IMG/VR virus record: IMGVR_UViG_3300036770_008729
Span: 217,115 to 281,114 of that record
Direction: 5' to 3' (one strand)
Length of the DNA stretch: 64,000 nt
In this document: piece by piece, positions 26,584-46,947 of the stretch
Position numbering within the stretch: the first letter of the stretch is position 1
How the letters are laid out: every line of letters starts with the position of its first letter
Position numbers and translations under genes: made by a program
The notes under the pieces: generated by a model
What the model saw: the letters and a program-made list of their open reading frames with translations, nothing else
Told to the model about the DNA's origin: nothing
The model's database searches: none

Positions 26584-26696
26584 TAGTCAGGACAGGAATC
26601 GAACCTGCATGTGGGCCTTGTGTGTATTTCAACTATACTGCGGGTTTATCCACTCCGTTTAACTATTCGGTGCGTTTACCATTTCGCTACCTGACT
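26584..26696 (-). ncRNA. tRNA-shelled RNA copy 1
   Basis: AGTCAGG/CCTGACT acceptor, D arm, TTCGATT T loop, no canonical anticodon arm. Confidence 0.7.
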
Positions 26697-27343: not shown

Positions 27344-27449
27344 TAGTCAGGACAGGACTCGAACCTATAATCTGAATAACCTATATCATCTTGATTTATT
27401 ACCAATGATATTTTGTATTCACGCTTTAACCCAATTTCGCCACCTGACT
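27344..27449 (-). ncRNA. tRNA-shelled RNA copy 2
   Basis: Same shell; one long hairpin TGAATA/TATTCA, ATATCAT/ATGATAT. Confidence 0.7.
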
Positions 27450-27598: not shown

Positions 27599-27769
27599 TA
27601 GTCAGGACAGGACTTGAACCTGTATGTTTAGTTTTTACACTTTCACTTTTGATCAGATACTTGTGAAGGATGTTAATCAGACTTCGGTGAGATCAAATCA
27701 CCTACACATCTACTCTAAACTTAACCTACCCTTTAGGATTTTCACGTCTACTAATTCCGTCACCTGACT
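27599..27769 (-). ncRNA. tRNA-shelled RNA copy 3 (longest)
   Basis: Same shell; insert closed by GTTTAG/CTAAAC. Confidence 0.7.
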
Positions 27770-28109: not shown

Positions 28110-28231
28110 TAGTCAGGACAGGATTCGAACCTGTAAGGTAACATTCGGTTTCAAGACTCTCCTCTATACCGATCAGAGGATGTAGTTACCACTTTACTCG
28201 TCTAATGCGTCTACCATTCCGCCACCTGACT
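28110..28231 (-). ncRNA. tRNA-shelled RNA copy 4
   Basis: Leu-like D arm GCGGAATGGTAGACGC; insert closed by GGTAAC/GTTACC. Confidence 0.7.
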
Positions 28232-28539: not shown

Positions 28540-28560
28540 ATATATTCAAAGAACTATTTG

Positions 28561-28636
28561 TCGTTAGGGTAGGACTCGAACCTACAATCTTTCGGGATTT
28601 TCACCCGAACGCTCTATCAAATTGAGCCACCTAACT
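28561..28636 (-). tRNA. Atypical tRNA (Phe-like, enlarged anticodon arm)
   Basis: Cloverleaf; TTCGGG-TGAAAAT-CCCGAA arm; A1:G72 mismatch; D loop lacks GG. Confidence 0.55.
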
Positions 28637-28642
28637 ATAATA

Positions 28643-28674
28643 CAAAGATAATAATAATTTTTATTATGACCAAA
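28643..28674 (-). promoter_or_regulatory. Bacteroidota sigma-70-type promoter driving the ncRNA array
   Basis: TTTG-N20-TATCTTTG. Confidence 0.75.
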
Positions 28675-40763: not shown

Positions 40764-40892
40764 AAGTCAGGACAGGAATCGAACCTGTGCTGTCATAAAA
40801 GGACTTCGGCCTCGGGTTACATCACGTATAGTTATTTCTAACACCCCGATACTATGCGACGGCTTAAGCGTTTTCCACTCCGCCACCTGACT
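40764..40892 (-). ncRNA. tRNA-shelled RNA copy 5
   Basis: Same AGTCAGG shell; insert with TCGGG/CCCGA helix. Confidence 0.7.
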
Positions 40893-41064: not shown

Positions 41065-41120
41065 TCAAATAACAATACAAACATAAGAATAATATTATTA
41101 ATATCCAAATTTATAGAGAA

Positions 41121-44247: not shown

Positions 44248-44278
44248 TTTGAAAATTAAAAATTAGTAATTATATTTG
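44248..44278 (+). promoter_or_regulatory. Bacteroidota sigma-70-type promoter
   Basis: TTTG-N19-TATATTTG. Confidence 0.75.
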
Positions 44279-44282
44279 TAAA

Positions 44283-44363
44283 ATGAAAACAACATTAAAC
44301 ATAGCGTGTTATTATGAGGGCGGGAATCCAATTCCGGTCAGACTAACAATTGCAATGTTTTAA
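44283..44363 (+). CDS. Leader peptide 2 (Ile/Ala/Tyr/Glu/Gly sensor)
   Basis: MKTTLNIACYYEGGNPIPVRLTIAMF*; antiterminator GTCAGACT 44337-44344. Confidence 0.85.
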   Translation: MKTTLNIACYYEGGNPIPVRLTIAMF

Positions 44364-44385: not shown

Positions 44386-44422
44386 AACCCAGTCTGATTA
44401 ATTAGATTGGGTTTTTTGTTTT
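44386..44422 (+). terminator. Attenuator terminator 2
   Basis: AACCCAGTCTGAT...ATTAGATTGGGTT-TTTTGTTTT. Confidence 0.85.
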
Positions 44423-44432
44423 AAACACATTT

Positions 44433-44526
44433 GGGAGGCTTCGCCACAAAGAGTCTGTAAAACTCTTCTTCGTTAACAAAATGGTGGCTGGTCTGGAGTT
44501 TAGAGGTTCGATTCTTCGGTCTCCCA
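44433..44526 (+). tRNA. tRNA-Tyr(GTA), non-canonical (no local D arm)
   Basis: AGAGT-CTGTAAA-ACTCT; acceptor GGGAGGC/GTCTCCC. Confidence 0.7.
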
Positions 44527-44534
44527 CAAAATAT

Positions 44535-44608
44535 AGGTGAGTAGCTTAGATGGTAAAAGCATGTGTCTTATACACACAAGATAGTGGGATCGTTACCCAC
44601 CTCACCTA
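44535..44608 (+). tRNA. tRNA-Ile(TAT)
   Basis: TGTGT-CTTATAC-ACACA; T loop ATCGTTA. Confidence 0.85.
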
Positions 44609-44615
44609 CAGAAAA

Positions 44616-44687
44616 GCGAGTATCGTATAATGGTCATTACTCCAGTCTTCCAAACTGGAGATGTCAGTTCGATTCTGACTACTCGCT
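44616..44687 (+). tRNA. tRNA-Gly(TCC)
   Basis: CCAGT-CTTCCAA-ACTGG. Confidence 0.9.
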
Positions 44688-44694
44688 CTAATTT

Positions 44695-44770
44695 GGGGTT
44701 ACATGTTCCAAGGCTTTGGCGAGACTGCTTTGCAAGCAATCTGTGGTGGGTTCGATTCCCACTAGCTCCA
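44695..44770 (+). tRNA. tRNA-Ala(TGC)
   Basis: G3:U70 pair; loop TTTGCAA; weak D arm. Confidence 0.8.
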
Positions 44771-44883
44771 CAAAAAAAATTGAAAAAAGATTTGGTAGAA
44801 TAAAAAACTCTTCTTATCTTTGTAATCAATTAAAACGAAGGTTGGTAATCTACTGTAAAACTCTGGTTTCCTTCTTAAATAAT

Positions 44884-44955
44884 GGTCCGTTCGTCTAGGG
44901 GTCAGGACGACACCCTTTCACGGTGTAGACACGAGTTCGATTCTCGTACGGACTA
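44884..44955 (+). tRNA. tRNA-Glu(TTC)
   Basis: ACACC-CTTTCAC-GGTGT; extra promoter TTTG-N20-TATCTTTG at 44791-44822. Confidence 0.9.
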
Positions 44956-44957
44956 CA

Positions 44958-45108
44958 GCTCATCAGAGTAATTAACTGATGAAGGAGGAACCGTCTTCGA
45001 AGCGGTAAAATGATTAGAGTGTAGGCTGCACACTGGCTCTTGAGTCTTAGACGCGGGTTTAAGATATCGGAGCCGGAGGTTAAAGGATCGTGTCCTTTTT
45101 AATCAGCA
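44958..45108 (+). ncRNA. Unidentified structured RNA (~150 nt)
   Basis: Helices CATCAG/CTGATG, ACCG/CGGT, TGATTA/TAATCA, GGCTC/GAGCC, TCTTAGAC/GTTTAAGA, AAAGGA/TCCTTT. Confidence 0.55.
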
Positions 45109-45162
45109 AATAAAAAATAAAGAGAGAAAAACTTCTTAATATATAGTAATATAATTAATACA

Positions 45163-45267
45163 ATGAAAAATATGAATCTAAATATCAATTTAATGCTCAC
45201 GGTGGTGAATACGTTATGTATTAGACCTACTGAGGGTGAATTTCTATTTAGAGAATTAAGTATGTAA
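45163..45267 (+). CDS. Leader peptide 3 (Asn/Met/Leu/Ile/Thr/Val/Cys/Arg sensor)
   Basis: MKNMNLNINLMLTVVNTLCIRPTEGEFLFRELSM*. Confidence 0.85.
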   Translation: MKNMNLNINLMLTVVNTLCIRPTEGEFLFRELSM

Positions 45268-45292
45268 AATATTTAACTTTAATAAAGTGATT

Positions 45293-45330
45293 AACCCTTA
45301 GATAGAAAAAATCTAAGGGTTTTTTGTTTT
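45293..45330 (+). terminator. Attenuator terminator 3
   Basis: AACCCTTAGAT-AGAAAAA-ATCTAAGGGTT-TTTTGTTTT. Confidence 0.85.
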
Positions 45331-45335
45331 ATACT

Positions 45336-45407
45336 GGAGTAGTAGCTTAATGGGGAAGCAATCGGCTGTTAACCGATAGATTATAGGTTCGAGTCCTATC
45401 TACTCCG
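45336..45407 (+). tRNA. tRNA-Asn(GTT)
   Basis: ATCGG-CTGTTAA-CCGAT. Confidence 0.9.
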
Positions 45408-45413
45408 CAACAC

Positions 45414-45487
45414 TGATGTGTAGCTCAAATGGTCAGAGCGCGAACCTGATAAGTTCGAGGTAGTGGGATCGTTACCCACCACATCAA
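45414..45487 (+). tRNA. tRNA-Ile(GAT)
   Basis: CGAAC-CTGATAA-GTTCG; T loop ATCGTTA. Confidence 0.9.
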
Positions 45488-45496
45488 CAAATAAAT

Positions 45497-45575
45497 GCCC
45501 CAATAACCGAGGTTGCCTTCTAAGCAACTAATCGTAACGGAGTGGAAGATATAGGTTCGAATCCTATTTGGGGTA
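45497..45575 (+). tRNA. tRNA-Arg(TCT), non-canonical (no local D arm)
   Basis: GTTGC-CTTCTAA-GCAAC; acceptor GCCCCAA/TTGGGGT. Confidence 0.7.
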
Positions 45576-46082: not shown

Positions 46083-46152
46083 GCCGCGGCTTAGTGGAAA
46101 AGAACCTAATCTCATAAGTTGGGTTAAATGAGTTCGACCCTCATACGCGGTA
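46083..46152 (+). tRNA. tRNA-Met/Ile2(CAT), compact
   Basis: CTAAT-CTCATAA-GTTGG; short D arm. Confidence 0.7.
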
Positions 46153-46249: not shown

Positions 46250-46345
46250 ATGACAACAATTCGCTCACATAAACATTTTAGTAAATCGAGTAAGTGGTTT
46301 AATACCCGCAGGTTCGGTACTAATAGCGTATTGTTTAAATTTTAA
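46250..46345 (+). CDS. Leader peptide 4 (Arg/Ser/His/Lys/Phe/Trp sensor)
   Basis: MTTIRSHKHFSKSSKWFNTRRFGTNSVLFKF*; antiterminator GGTTCGG 46311-46317. Confidence 0.85.
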   Translation: MTTIRSHKHFSKSSKWFNTRRFGTNSVLFKF

Positions 46346-46578: not shown

Positions 46579-46649
46579 ACACGATACAGACAAGGTGTCG
46601 GTCAGGTCTCCAAAACCTCGATGGGTGAGTTCGATTCTTACATCGTGTG
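46579..46649 (+). tRNA. tRNA-Trp(CCA)
   Basis: AGGT-CTCCAAA-ACCT. Confidence 0.8.
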
Positions 46650-46812: not shown

Positions 46813-46947
46813 GGGGATGTAGCTCAGTGGTAGAGTTTTAAAATATCTCTTTTGAGGTTTTACCTCTTGAAAAGGAGTGTTGATTAAAAGAGTTACTTCG
46901 TTTGAATTGAAATCAAAAGGTCGTGGGTTCGAATCCCACCATCCCCG
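46813..46947 (+). tRNA. tRNA (TGA anticodon) with ~60-nt hairpin inserted between D and anticodon arms
   Basis: GGGGATG/CATCCCC, G73; TTTGA-ATTGAAA-TCAAA. Confidence 0.65.

What the first reader, a model, noticed from the sequence alone, without database searches (positions are those of the whole stretch)
44433..45575. Two tRNAs with a rewired core: D-stem partner and GG motif relocated into the variable region
tRNA-Tyr(GTA) and tRNA-Arg(TCT) have only 8-10 nt between acceptor and anticodon stems. That short strand is complementary to a stretch in an enlarged variable region (GCCAC/GTGGC; CCG/CGG), followed by a D-loop-like TGG motif. Both amino acids are in the cognate leader (TAT TAT; AGA), which argues they are functional. 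Inference: an alternative topology giving the L-shape.
Basis: partly seen in the sequence, partly recalled or inferred. Interest (0 to 1): 0.72.

Follow-up and report, generated by a model that had tools for sequence, protein, structure and literature searches.

The report
Phage tRNAs with a rewired D-arm
Two tRNA genes in this jumbo-phage tRNA array lack a normal D-arm and instead build one by pairing the short 5' connector with a strand moved into the enlarged variable region; they belong to two widespread, apparently undescribed, phage-specific tRNA architectures that standard tRNA finders miss.

Summary
Both genes are real: tRNA-Tyr(GTA) at 44433-44526 and tRNA-Arg(TCT) at 45497-45575. Each has normal acceptor, anticodon and T arms, but only a 10- or 8-nt connector where the D-arm should be, and a 35- or 22-nt variable region.

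Homologs from viral contigs show two structural classes.
- **Class A:** 70 distinct sequences, only Arg and Ile anticodons. A 3-bp helix forms between the connector and a strand 3-5 nt after the anticodon stem, followed by U-A-R-N-G-G-N. The helix covaries: 94% paired against 64% in shuffles. A Levitt-like R15/Y48 covariation holds in 69 of 70. The base after GG is A in Arg (position 20 if GG is G18-G19; A20 is the ArgRS identity base) and U in Ile.
- **Class B:** 24 distinct Tyr sequences with an 8/4 acceptor/T stem. A 5-7-bp helix joins the connector to a strand inside the variable-arm loop, followed by UGGUC.

His CCG/CGG pairing for Arg is not. The covarying pair there is CGA/TCG, and his "CGG" contains the relocated GG.

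Leader peptides, array position and completion of the 20-amino-acid set argue that these tRNAs decode. Expression, charging and 3D shape are untested. I found no prior description.

The parts
44433..44526 (+). tRNA-Tyr(GTA), class B (rewired, 8/4 type), 94 nt, no encoded CCA
   Evidence: Parsed from the sequence. Covariance model R2, built from 13 other class B genes without this sequence, hits it at 51.5 bits, E 2e-10, as the only hit in the 281-kb genome. A homolog in L148 is 82% identical.
44433..44440 (+). Tyr acceptor stem 5' strand, 8 nt; pairs with 44518-44525. T44440 pairs with G44518 as the 8th pair.
   Evidence: The 8:65 pair covaries across the class: U.G, G:C, A:U (in A5, GC 12 and AU 1).
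44443..44447 (+). Tyr strand a (GCCAC): the connector strand of the D-like helix
   Evidence: Pairs with 44484-44488. The change C:G to U:A in L148 is compensatory. The class-wide helix averages 6.1 bp against 4.1 in shuffles, 0/1000. It is 92.3% paired, with 4 pairs changed on both sides.
44450..44466 (+). Tyr anticodon arm (AGAGT CTGTAAA ACTCT); anticodon GTA at 44457-44459
   Evidence: Sequence; the stem covaries with L148 (CAGGT/ACCTG).
44468..44472 (+). Tyr strand c (CTTCG): 5' strand of the variable-arm stem
   Evidence: Pairs with TGGAG at 44494-44498. It becomes CTGCG/TGCAG in L148 (U.G to G:C on both sides). The class mean is 4.25 bp against 3.2 in shuffles, 0/1000. The variant T44470C seen in relatives turns U.G into C:G.
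44484..44488 (+). Tyr strand a' (GTGGC): the relocated D-stem partner, inside the variable-arm loop
44489..44493 (+). Tyr UGGUC motif, the candidate G18-G19 equivalent
   Evidence: Present in the three members found without requiring it: the window, L148 (by BLAST) and L166 (by an anticodon-arm pattern). In the other members the search pattern imposed it.
44494..44498 (+). Tyr strand c' (TGGAG): 3' strand of the variable-arm stem
44503..44517 (+). Tyr T arm: 4-bp stem GAGG/CTTC and loop TTCGATT
   Evidence: Sequence.
45497..45575 (+). tRNA-Arg(TCT), class A (D-swapped), 79 nt, no encoded CCA
   Evidence: Rfam tRNA match of 38.7 bits with the D-arm deleted. Orthologs in L001, L002, L061, L081, L087 and L090.
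45504..45505 (+). Arg U8-A9 equivalents
   Evidence: All 70 class A connectors begin with TA, and no search required this.
45508..45510 (+). Arg strand a (CGA): equivalent to D-stem positions 23-25; G45511 is then position 26
   Evidence: Pairs with TCG at 45532-45534. Covariation includes CGA:TCG, CCC:GGG, CGG:CCG, CAG:CTG and CGT:GCG. It is 93.8% paired against 63.7% +/- 2.4 in shuffles, 0/2000. On A3 it is 95.1% paired, with 3 of 3 pairs changed on both sides. The minimum-free-energy fold also forms it.
45512..45528 (+). Arg anticodon arm (GTTGC CTTCTAA GCAAC); anticodon TCT at 45519-45521
45532..45534 (+). Arg strand a' (TCG): equivalent to D-stem positions 10-12, relocated 3 nt after the anticodon stem
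45535..45541 (+). Arg relocated D-loop-like motif U-A14-A15-C16-G18-G19-A20 (TAACGGA)
   Evidence: The motif TA-R-N(N)-GG-N is also found in members retrieved by the covariance model rather than by pattern. The base after GG is A in 29 of 31 Arg genes and T in 36 of 38 Ile genes.
45550..45550 (+). Arg U48 equivalent, the candidate Levitt partner of A15 (45537)
   Evidence: Covariation of R15 with the last variable-region base: G with C 37 times, A with T 32 times, one exception in 70.
45551..45567 (+). Arg T arm (ATAGG TTCGAAT CCTAT)
44283..44363 (+). Leader ORF 1 (MKTTLNIACYYEGGNPIPVRLTIAMF), followed by a terminator hairpin around 44389-44420, upstream of the Tyr-Ile-Gly-Ala-Glu sub-array
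Evidence: Seven of the eight residues IACYYEGG match the tRNAs that follow.
45163..45267 (+). Leader ORF 2 (MKNMNLNINLMLTVVNTLCIRPTEGEFLFRELSM), followed by a terminator around 45291-45330, upstream of the sub-array that holds Arg(TCT)
   Evidence: A run of 19 residues all drawn from the amino acids of the 10 downstream tRNAs, including AGA (background 0.41 per residue, p about 4.5e-8). The ORF is conserved in L001 and L002.

Best explanation
Both genes most likely encode working elongator tRNAs whose D-domain is assembled in trans rather than as a hairpin. [quoted passage not shown] The strand that normally returns from the D-loop into the anticodon stem (positions 22-25) stays in place as the short 5' connector. 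Its partner (positions 10-13) and a GG-bearing D-loop remnant have moved to the 3' side of the anticodon arm, into the variable region.

In Arg (class A, shared with phage Ile tRNAs) the relocated block is TCG + U-A14-A15-C-G18-G19-A20. It ends in U48, which can pair with A15. The canonical core contacts (U8:A14, R15:Y48, G18G19 with the T loop, D helix stacked on the anticodon stem) can therefore all re-form. This amounts to rejoining the chain 9 to 22, 45 to 10 and 21 to 46.

In Tyr (class B) the acceptor/T helix is 8/4. A 5-bp helix (5-7 bp across the class) forms between the connector and a strand inside the loop of a short variable arm, followed by UGGUC. This gives a pseudoknot-like core.

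Shown: the helices, their covariation, the conserved motifs, the phage-wide distribution and the array context. Inferred: the L-shape, processing, charging by host ArgRS and TyrRS (the phage encodes neither), and use in decoding. Why phages keep such tRNAs is unknown. One speculative idea is escape from nucleases that recognise tRNA shape.
For: **Structure**
- Class A helix: 93.8% paired against 63.7% +/- 2.4 in shuffles, 0/2000, with 21 different strand pairs.
- On the covariance-model alignment of 70 sequences it is 95.1% paired, and all 3 pairs change on both sides.
- R15/Y48 covaries in 69 of 70 sequences.
- All 70 connectors start with TA.
- The base after GG is A in 29 of 31 Arg genes and U in 36 of 38 Ile genes. 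If GG is G18-G19 this base is position 20, and from my own knowledge A20 is the main E. coli ArgRS identity base.
- Class B helix a:a' averages 6.1 bp against 4.1, and c:c' 4.25 against 3.2, both 0/1000.
- On A5, a:a' is 92.3% paired with 4 pairs changed on both sides, and the 8:65 pair covaries.
- Model R2, built without the window, finds the window Tyr at 51.5 bits.

**Function**
- The genes sit in register inside tight tRNA arrays. In L408 the class B Tyr fills the Asn|Trp gap in a 22-tRNA array that has no other Tyr. L166 shows the same arrangement.
- Half of the class B genes encode CCA.
- ARAGORN's tRNAs for this genome cover 17 amino acids. The missing Tyr, Ala and Trp are supplied exactly by the odd genes.
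- Leader peptides upstream of each sub-array are made of the amino acids of the tRNAs that follow, including TAT TAT and AGA.

**Distribution**
- Members have 36-63% GC and come from 55 loci.
- One is in the cultured Streptomyces phage Coruscant.
- The same pattern gave 32 class A loci among 120 viral hits, but only 1 among 120 hits in cellular genomes.
Against: - There is no expression, end-mapping, modification or aminoacylation data. No RNA run holds this phage.
- The 3D fold was not modelled, so contact between GG and the T loop is inferred only from motif conservation.
- Parts of the motifs (TA-R-N-GG in class A, TGGTC in class B) were imposed by the search patterns for most members.
- The genome also has a canonical tRNA-Arg(TCT) at G000 151868-151940, so the rewired Arg is not needed for decoding.
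- G002 has canonical Tyr genes beside the rewired one.
- The window Tyr has a weak 4-bp T stem with a G.U pair.
- The class A D-like helix is only 3 bp.
- The genome encodes no ArgRS, IleRS or TyrRS, so host enzymes would have to accept the altered core.
Confidence: 0.65

Rival explanations
1. They are functional tRNAs but are truly D-armless, like animal mitochondrial tRNA-Ser(AGY). The connector/variable-region pairing would only lengthen the anticodon helix. The GG would not dock on the T loop, and the molecule would be a flexible Y or boomerang rather than a canonical L.
For: The a:a' helix is nested around the anticodon arm and nearly coaxial with it. That is how extended anticodon stems are drawn for D-armless mitochondrial tRNAs (my own knowledge). 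The E. coli translation machinery accepts an artificial tRNA with no D-arm (PMC11551756). Lak-like phages also carry 66-67-nt Tyr tRNAs with only a TTGG connector.
Against: Unlike mitochondrial D-armless tRNAs, these keep a fully canonical T loop (GTTCRANTC) and conserved U8, A14-like and GG positions. They also keep an R15/Y48 covariation (69 of 70) and an identity-linked base after GG. None of these would be under selection without a D-loop-like tertiary core. Their total length is not reduced (73-94 nt).
Confidence: 0.15
2. They are tRNA-like RNAs that are made and processed but not used for decoding. They could be decoys that soak up host tRNA-targeting nucleases, regulators, or substrates for another enzyme.
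For: Phage tRNAs are known counter-defences against tRNA-depleting systems, for example T5 tRNA-Tyr against retron-Eco7 (PMC11555353). Several genomes carry canonical isoacceptors next to the rewired ones. T5-like phages hold a relative of the class A 3' half within 'RNAX', whose anticodon loop is reduced to 4 nt.
Against: The anticodon loops are canonical 7-nt loops with U33 and R37, restricted to a few identities (Arg, Ile, Tyr). Identity-linked bases and discriminator A are kept. In L408, L166 and this genome the rewired Tyr is the only Tyr tRNA found. Leader peptide codons match them.
Confidence: 0.13
3. They are decaying tRNA pseudogenes that lost the D-arm, and the complementarity is chance.
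For: In the single window sequence, a 5-bp and a 3-bp complement are not beyond chance. ARAGORN and default Rfam miss both genes.
Against: The same architectures recur in 70 and 24 distinct sequences from unrelated phages, with compensatory changes in every helix, including the new ones. Variants in relatives preserve the pairing.
Confidence: 0.03
4. The genes are intron-bearing, split or permuted precursors that are processed into an ordinary cloverleaf.
For: The same array holds a 135-nt tRNA gene with an internal insert (46813-46947) and long tRNA-like genes.
Against: Removing any single contiguous segment cannot create a D hairpin between the acceptor and anticodon stems, because only 8-10 nt lie there. 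Some class A genes are only 73 nt long in total (L087). No bulge-helix-bulge or group I features were seen.
Confidence: 0.02

Closest known systems
Canonical bacterial and phage elongator tRNAs (Rfam RF00005)
   Same: A 12-bp acceptor/T helix, a T loop GTTCRANTC, a 5-bp anticodon stem with a 7-nt loop (U33, R37), discriminator A, and genes placed in tRNA arrays. The class A core bases can be mapped one-to-one onto U8, A14, R15, G18, G19, N20 and Y48.
   Different: There is no D hairpin. The two strands of the D stem lie on opposite sides of the anticodon arm, and the D-loop remnant sits in the variable region. ARAGORN finds 5 of 70 class A and 0 of 24 class B genes.
D-armless mitochondrial tRNA-Ser(AGY), and the engineered 'mini HisT' (PMC11551756)
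   Same: A short connector replaces the D-arm, and extra pairs extend the anticodon helix.
   Different: Those molecules lose the D-loop/T-loop contacts and are shortened. Here the T loop is canonical, a GG-bearing D-loop-like motif is retained elsewhere, and length is normal or larger. The setting is bacterial viruses, not organelles. PMC11551756 states that all known bacterial tRNAs are cloverleaf.
(8/4) tRNAs and allo-tRNAs of bacteria and phages (Mukai et al. 2017, PMC5389517), and tRNA-Sec
   Same: Class B Tyr has an 8-bp acceptor stem and a 4-bp T stem, a 2-nt connector, a long (5-7 bp) D-like helix and a variable arm. The best (weak) Rfam hit of the window Tyr is the tRNA-Sec model.
   Different: Allo-tRNAs and tRNA-Sec have a normal D hairpin (long stem, tetraloop). 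In class B the 'D stem' encloses the whole anticodon arm and its 3' strand lies in the variable-arm loop. The identity is Tyr, whereas that paper describes 8/4 Ser and His tRNAs in phages.
Bacterial class II tRNA-Tyr
   Same: Anticodon GUA, discriminator A and a base-paired variable arm (c:c').
   Different: The variable-arm loop is expanded to 18-25 nt and supplies the D-stem strand and the GG. There is no D hairpin.

Membership tests
Canonical tRNA (Rfam RF00005 / ARAGORN cloverleaf) | Acceptor stem, T arm with a T-psi-C-type loop, and an anticodon arm with a 7-nt loop | tested here: met
   Both genes. The stems covary in homologs.
Canonical tRNA (Rfam RF00005 / ARAGORN cloverleaf) | D-arm hairpin between the acceptor and anticodon stems | tested here: not met
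   Only 10 nt (Tyr) and 8 nt (Arg) lie there. The Rfam alignment deletes the D-arm.
Canonical tRNA (Rfam RF00005 / ARAGORN cloverleaf) | Score at or above the curated gathering threshold (29 bits), or an ARAGORN call | tested here: inconclusive
   Arg scores 38.7 bits, but only with relaxed filters, and is absent from the default scan. Tyr has no RF00005 hit. ARAGORN calls neither.
Class A 'D-swapped' phage tRNA (Arg/Ile), defined here | Connector starting UA; a 3-bp covarying helix between the connector and a strand 3-5 nt after the anticodon stem; then U-A-R-N(N)-G-G-N; the last variable-region base complementary to R15 | tested here: met
   The window Arg has all of these features. It scores 99.5 bits against R1, but it is one of the sequences R1 was built from.
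Class B rewired phage tRNA-Tyr, defined here | 8/4 acceptor/T stems; a 5-7-bp helix between the connector and a strand in the variable-arm loop; UGGUC; a variable-arm stem c:c' | tested here: met
   The window Tyr has T8.G65, GCCAC:GTGGC, TGGTC and CTTCG:TGGAG. It scores 51.5 bits against R2, which was built without it.
Mitochondrial-type D-armless tRNA | Loss of the D-loop/T-loop interaction elements (degenerate T loop, no GG) and reduced length | tested here: not met
   The T loops are canonical, the GG motif is conserved, and lengths are 73-94 nt.
(8/4) allo-tRNA / tRNA-Sec-like | 8-bp acceptor stem with a 4-bp T stem | tested here: met
   Tyr class only: the 8:65 pair covaries. Arg is 7/5.
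(8/4) allo-tRNA / tRNA-Sec-like | Long D stem closed by a tetraloop hairpin; RF01852 gathering score (47 bits) | tested here: not met
   No D hairpin. RF01852 gives 16.9 bits. The anticodon is GTA.
Functional aminoacylated tRNA | Mature 5' and 3' ends, CCA, charging with the cognate amino acid | not testable with these tools
   No RNA run holds the phage. Half of the class B genes encode CCA. The window genes do not.

The most novel reading that the evidence does not exclude
Bacterial viruses carry at least two families of genuinely non-cloverleaf tRNAs that work on bacterial ribosomes: Arg/Ile, and Tyr. In both, the D-domain is assembled in trans from the 5' connector and the variable region. 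They may be kept because the altered core makes them invisible to host (or phage-encoded) nucleases and defence systems that recognise the shape of tRNA-Tyr, tRNA-Arg or tRNA-Ile. If so, the phage keeps translating while host tRNAs are destroyed.
Probability: 0.3. Interest if true: 0.9.

Novelty: new variant of a known kind. Interest (0 to 1): 0.8.

Why it matters
[quoted passage not shown] Known exceptions are confined to animal mitochondria. If these RNAs are charged and used, three things follow.
- The cloverleaf is not obligatory in bacterial translation. The tertiary core can be rebuilt with a different chain topology, which is a natural "strand swap" experiment on tRNA folding.
- Standard annotation undercounts phage tRNAs. 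ARAGORN finds 5 of 94. In a RefSeq phage genome, one such gene is overlapped by a CDS start.
- These scaffolds would be ready-made orthogonal tRNAs for genetic-code engineering.

They could also reveal which features host synthetases, RNase P, EF-Tu and anti-phage tRNA nucleases really read. A cultured phage (Streptomyces phage Coruscant) carries one, so the question can be tested directly.

Tried and rejected
**Searches that added little**
- BLAST of the Tyr gene against 50,697 phage records found nothing. BLAST of three other family members against the same collection gave only Streptomyces phage Coruscant.
- The first viral scan pattern gave about 100 chance hits and 5 real ones.
- The one metagenome scan returned only a duplicate of L412.
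- No RNA-seq run holds this phage, so expression and ends could not be examined. Laying DNA contigs gave a few natural variants only.

**Analyses that did not work**
- My first permissive motif scanner was too noisy.
- A MAFFT alignment of all class B genes put the three subgroups out of register (A4). I therefore used a 13-sequence subgroup (A5) for the pair-counting tool and a structure-anchored parse for the rest. On A5 the c:c' helix scores only 59.6% because some c' strands are offset by one base.

**Readings rejected**
- An alternative 6-7-bp wobble register for the window Tyr (TCGCCA/TGGTGG) fails in L412.
- A phage-encoded TyrRS, ArgRS or IleRS that might explain acceptance was sought and not found.

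**Not run**
- I did not run complex prediction. It gives no verdict for RNA and would not report the intramolecular contacts at issue.
- tRNAscan-SE was not available.
Full report
**Context.** The window is the last 64 kb of a 281-kb virus record. IMG/VR classes it as a provirus and CheckV estimates 94% completeness. GC content is about 30%. DNA runs that hold it come from subsurface and freshwater metagenomes, and no RNA run holds it. The nearest public relatives of the tRNA region are two uncultured phages of 635 and 642 kb, LR745206.1 and LR756502.1. Bacteroidota-type promoter motifs (TTTG-N17-21-TAnnTTTG) occur 15 times against 4.1 expected, including just upstream of the arrays. This hints at a Bacteroidota host; the consensus is from my own knowledge.

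**Checking the observation.** ARAGORN finds 23 tRNAs in the window but none at the two sites. Default Rfam also misses both.
- *Tyr, 44433-44526.* Reading the sequence gives:

  | Element | Sequence |
  |---|---|
  | Acceptor 5' strand | GGGAGGC |
  | Connector | TTCGCCACAA |
  | Anticodon arm | AGAGT-CTGTAAA-ACTCT |
  | Variable region | 35 nt |
  | T-arm region (5' strand, loop, 3' strand) | AGAGG-TTCGATT-CTTCG |
  | Acceptor 3' strand | GTCTCCC |
  | Discriminator | A |

- *Arg, 45497-45575.* The gene reads:

  | Element | Sequence |
  |---|---|
  | Acceptor 5' strand | GCCCCAA |
  | Connector | TAACCGAG |
  | Anticodon arm | GTTGC-CTTCTAA-GCAAC |
  | Variable region | TAATCGTAACGGAGTGGAAGAT |
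  | T arm | ATAGG-TTCGAAT-CCTAT |
  | Acceptor 3' strand | TTGGGGT |
  | Discriminator | A |

- With relaxed filters the Rfam tRNA model matches Arg at 38.7 bits, deleting the D-arm and inserting 19 nt in the variable loop. Tyr gets only 16.9 bits, from the tRNA-Sec model.

In a single sequence, however, a 5-bp or 3-bp complement is not beyond chance. The test has to be comparative.

**The Arg gene belongs to a large class (class A).**
- *How members were found.* Orthologs lie at the syntenic place in the two large phages. A first viral-contig pattern scan added five more. These already showed CGA:TCG changing to CCC:GGG and to CGG:CCG. A covariance model (R1) then found members with other anticodons in the related genomes. 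Two anticodon-agnostic scans (GTAAYGG or GTAGCGG, 6-13 nt, then a T loop) were capped at about 120 rows each.
- *Size and identity.* My structure-anchored parse gives 70 distinct genes from 55 loci, with 36-63% GC. The anticodons are only Arg (TCT 18, TCG 8, ACG 4, CCT 1) and Ile (TAT 26, GAT 12, CAT 1).
- *Shared plan.* The genes share this order:
  1. acceptor stem (7 bp);
  2. U-A;
  3. 0-1 nt;
  4. one unpaired base (position 22), then a 3-nt strand a;
  5. one nt, then the anticodon arm;
  6. 3-5 A-rich nt;
  7. a 3-nt strand a';
  8. U-A-R-N(N)-G-G-N;
  9. 4-11 nt (rarely about 20), ending in Y;
  10. a canonical T arm.
- *The helix covaries.* Strands a and a' are paired in 93.8% of positions against 63.7% +/- 2.4 when partners are shuffled among sequences (0/2000). 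There are 21 different strand pairs. On the model-fitted alignment A3, the pair-counting tool gives 95.1% paired, with all three pairs changed on both sides in 5, 24 and 29 sequences. This is comparable to the classical stems.
Its apparent complementarity comes from conserved composition.

**Class A maps onto the canonical tRNA core.** If a is positions 23-25 and a' is positions 10-12, the block after a' reads U13-A14-R15-N16(17)-G18-G19-N20. Three features that my searches did not impose fit this mapping:
- Every connector starts with UA (U8, A9).
- R15 covaries with the last variable-region base: G with C 37 times, A with U 32 times, one exception. This is the signature of the 15:48 Levitt pair.
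- The base after GG is A in 29 of 31 Arg genes and U in 36 of 38 Ile genes. From my own knowledge, A20 is the main E. coli ArgRS identity base.

Topologically this is the ordinary tRNA core with the chain rejoined 9 to 22, 45 to 10 and 21 to 46. In the canonical structure these junctions are spatial neighbours (my own knowledge), so an L-shape is plausible. That step is inference.

In the window the elements are CGA 45508-45510, TCG 45532-45534, TAACGGA 45535-45541 and U48 at 45550.

**The Tyr gene belongs to a second class (class B).**
- *How members were found.* BLAST in related genomes found one homolog at 82% identity (L148). It carries two compensatory changes outside the classical stems: GCCAC/GTGGC becomes GCTAC/GTAGC, and CTTCG/TGGAG becomes CTGCG/TGCAG. 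An anticodon-arm pattern found an unrelated member, L166 (CCTCAT/ATGAGG; ACCC/GGGT), which also has TGGTC. A targeted scan brought the total to 24 distinct genes.
- *Shared plan.* The genes share this order:
  1. an 8-bp acceptor stem;
  2. 2 nt;
  3. strand a (5-7 nt; 3 nt in one subgroup), abutting or nearly abutting the anticodon stem;
  4. the anticodon arm (GTA);
  5. strand c (4-5 nt);
  6. an A/U-rich loop of 6-13 nt;
  7. strand a';
  8. UGGUC;
  9. strand c';
  10. 0-3 nt;
  11. a 4-bp T stem.
- *Both new helices covary.* The a:a' helix averages 6.1 bp against 4.1 +/- 0.23 in shuffles, and c:c' 4.25 against 3.2 +/- 0.15, both 0/1000. On a 13-sequence alignment the tool gives 92.3% pairing for a:a', with four pairs changed on both sides, and a covarying 8:65 pair.
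- *The window gene is a member by an independent test.* Model R2, built from that subgroup without the window sequence, recovers the window gene at 51.5 bits as the only hit in the genome.
The c:c' stem makes the fold pseudoknot-like: the variable-arm loop supplies the D-stem strand and the GG. The 8/4 arrangement links this class loosely to the (8/4) Ser and His tRNAs of phages described by Mukai et al. (PMC5389517), but those keep a D hairpin.

**Evidence that these are working tRNAs (indirect).**
- *Array position.* The genes sit in register in tight tRNA arrays. In L408 the class B Tyr exactly fills the gap between Asn and Trp in a 22-tRNA array that otherwise lacks Tyr. L166 is similar.
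- *Encoded CCA.* Half of the class B genes encode CCA.
- *Completing the amino-acid set.* In this genome ARAGORN's tRNAs cover 17 amino acids. The missing Tyr, Ala and Trp are provided exactly by three odd genes at 44433, 44695 and 46579.
- *Leader peptides.* Each sub-array is preceded by a small ORF and a terminator, and the peptide is made of the amino acids whose tRNAs follow.
  - Leader 2 has a run of 19 such residues (p about 4.5e-8), including AGA.
  - Leader 3 has a run of 13 (p about 5e-8).
  - Leader 1 reads I-A-C-Y-Y-E-G-G before Tyr, Ile(TAT), Gly, Ala and Glu; this is weaker, at roughly 1e-3 per position.
  - The leaders are conserved in the 640-kb phages.
- *Synthetases.* The genome encodes no TyrRS, ArgRS or IleRS, so host enzymes would have to charge these tRNAs.

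**Distribution and novelty.**
- The same search pattern gave 32 class A loci among 120 viral hits, but 1 among 120 hits in 185,579 cellular genomes. That one sits in a phage-like tRNA array.
- ARAGORN recognises 5 of 70 class A and 0 of 24 class B genes.
- In the RefSeq record of the cultured Streptomyces phage Coruscant, a class A Ile(GAT) at 73025-73101 is unannotated, and the start of an FtsK-like CDS overlaps it.
- Full-text searches found no description of phage or bacterial tRNAs without a D hairpin. A 2024 paper states that all known bacterial tRNAs are cloverleaf (PMC11551756). A 2020 review of non-canonical tRNAs does not mention phages (PMC7609411).
- I therefore rate this as a new structural variant of a known kind of molecule.

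**Open points.** Expression, processing, modification, charging and the 3D fold are all untested. The main rival is that the molecules function but are mitochondrial-style D-armless tRNAs without a D/T elbow. A second rival is that they are decoys. Canonical isoacceptors coexist in several genomes, and tRNA-Tyr is a known target of phage defence (PMC11555353). Lak-like phages even carry a third kind, a 66-67-nt Tyr tRNA with only a TTGG connector. This suggests particular pressure on the D region of tRNA-Tyr. The link to nuclease evasion is speculation.

Noticed in passing
window 44283-44363, 45163-45267, 46250-46345 (each followed by a terminator hairpin ending near 44420, 45330 and 46405): Three leader ORFs with terminators precede the three tRNA sub-arrays. 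Each leader peptide is composed of the amino acids of the tRNAs that follow (runs of 19 and 13 matching residues in leaders 2 and 3). The 3' part of leader 2 (CTGAGGGT) is complementary to the 5' arm of its terminator (ACCCTTAG). This looks like ribosome-mediated attenuation that senses the supply of the array's own tRNAs. It is conserved in LR756502.1 and LR745206.1.
   Followed up: partly
window 44695-44770, 46083-46152, 46579-46649: Three more tRNA genes that ARAGORN misses: Ala(TGC), Met(CAT) and Trp(CCA). They have miniature D-arms (4-bp stem with loop GGCT; 3-bp stem with a 7-nt loop; 4-bp stem with a 3-nt loop AGG). With Tyr, they complete the phage's set of 20 amino acids.
   Followed up: partly
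window minus strand 26584-26696, 27344-27449, 27599-27769, 28110-28231, 40764-40892: Five paralogous tRNA-like genes of 106-171 nt. They share the same acceptor stem (AGTCAGG/CCTGACT), a class-II-like D-arm and a T arm, but have very different middles. Two reach the Rfam tRNA threshold. Whether these are introns, inserts or another non-canonical class was not determined.
   Followed up: no
window 46813-46947: A 135-nt tRNA gene with a normal acceptor, D-arm and T arm and an insert of about 60 nt before or around the anticodon arm. Rfam gives weak tRNA and tmRNA matches.
   Followed up: no
G001:C1:231736-231802; LR756502.1 389278-389343; LR745206.1 365671-365736; G002:C1:18830-18896: Tyr(GTA) tRNA genes of 66-67 nt in Lak-like megaphages. 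A connector of only about 4 nt (TTGG) replaces the whole D-arm, beside a normal short variable hairpin and T arm. This would be a third, truly D-armless kind.
   Followed up: partly
L003 281-352 (phage BF23/T5 'RNAX', AJ604530.1): T5-like phages carry a tRNA-like segment whose 3' half (CGTAACTGGTGGAAGAT plus the T arm and a G1.U72 acceptor) resembles class A. Its anticodon loop is reduced to 4 nt. Different records annotate it as RNAX, tRNA-OTHER or pseudo.
   Followed up: partly
L453 1495-1571 (Streptomyces phage Coruscant NC_070782.1 73025-73101): An unannotated class A tRNA-Ile(GAT) in a cultured phage. It lies directly after a nucleotidyltransferase gene, and the annotated start of an FtsK/SpoIIIE-like CDS overlaps it.
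   Followed up: yes
window, 15 sites including 44248-44278, 44791-44822, 28643-28674(-), 41078-41109(-): The Bacteroidota-type promoter consensus TTTG-N17-21-TAnnTTTG is enriched (15 against 4.1 expected, 0 of 100 shuffles) and lies upstream of the tRNA arrays. This hints at a Bacteroidota host. The -7 box at 44271-44278 ends 4 nt before the leader-1 ATG, so that leader may be translated from a leaderless transcript.
   Followed up: partly
window 28560-28636 (-) and 44535-44609 (+): Rare anticodons: tRNA-Phe(AAA) and tRNA-Ile(TAT), both called by ARAGORN.
   Followed up: no
window 44957-45100; G000 132974-133052: A non-tRNA segment of about 140 nt lies inside the array, between tRNA-Glu and leader 2, and ends in a hairpin plus a T run. 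One relative's contig skips 44956-45008. Elsewhere in the genome there is a 79-nt tRNA-like element with acceptor and T arms but no standard anticodon loop. Neither is explained.
   Followed up: no
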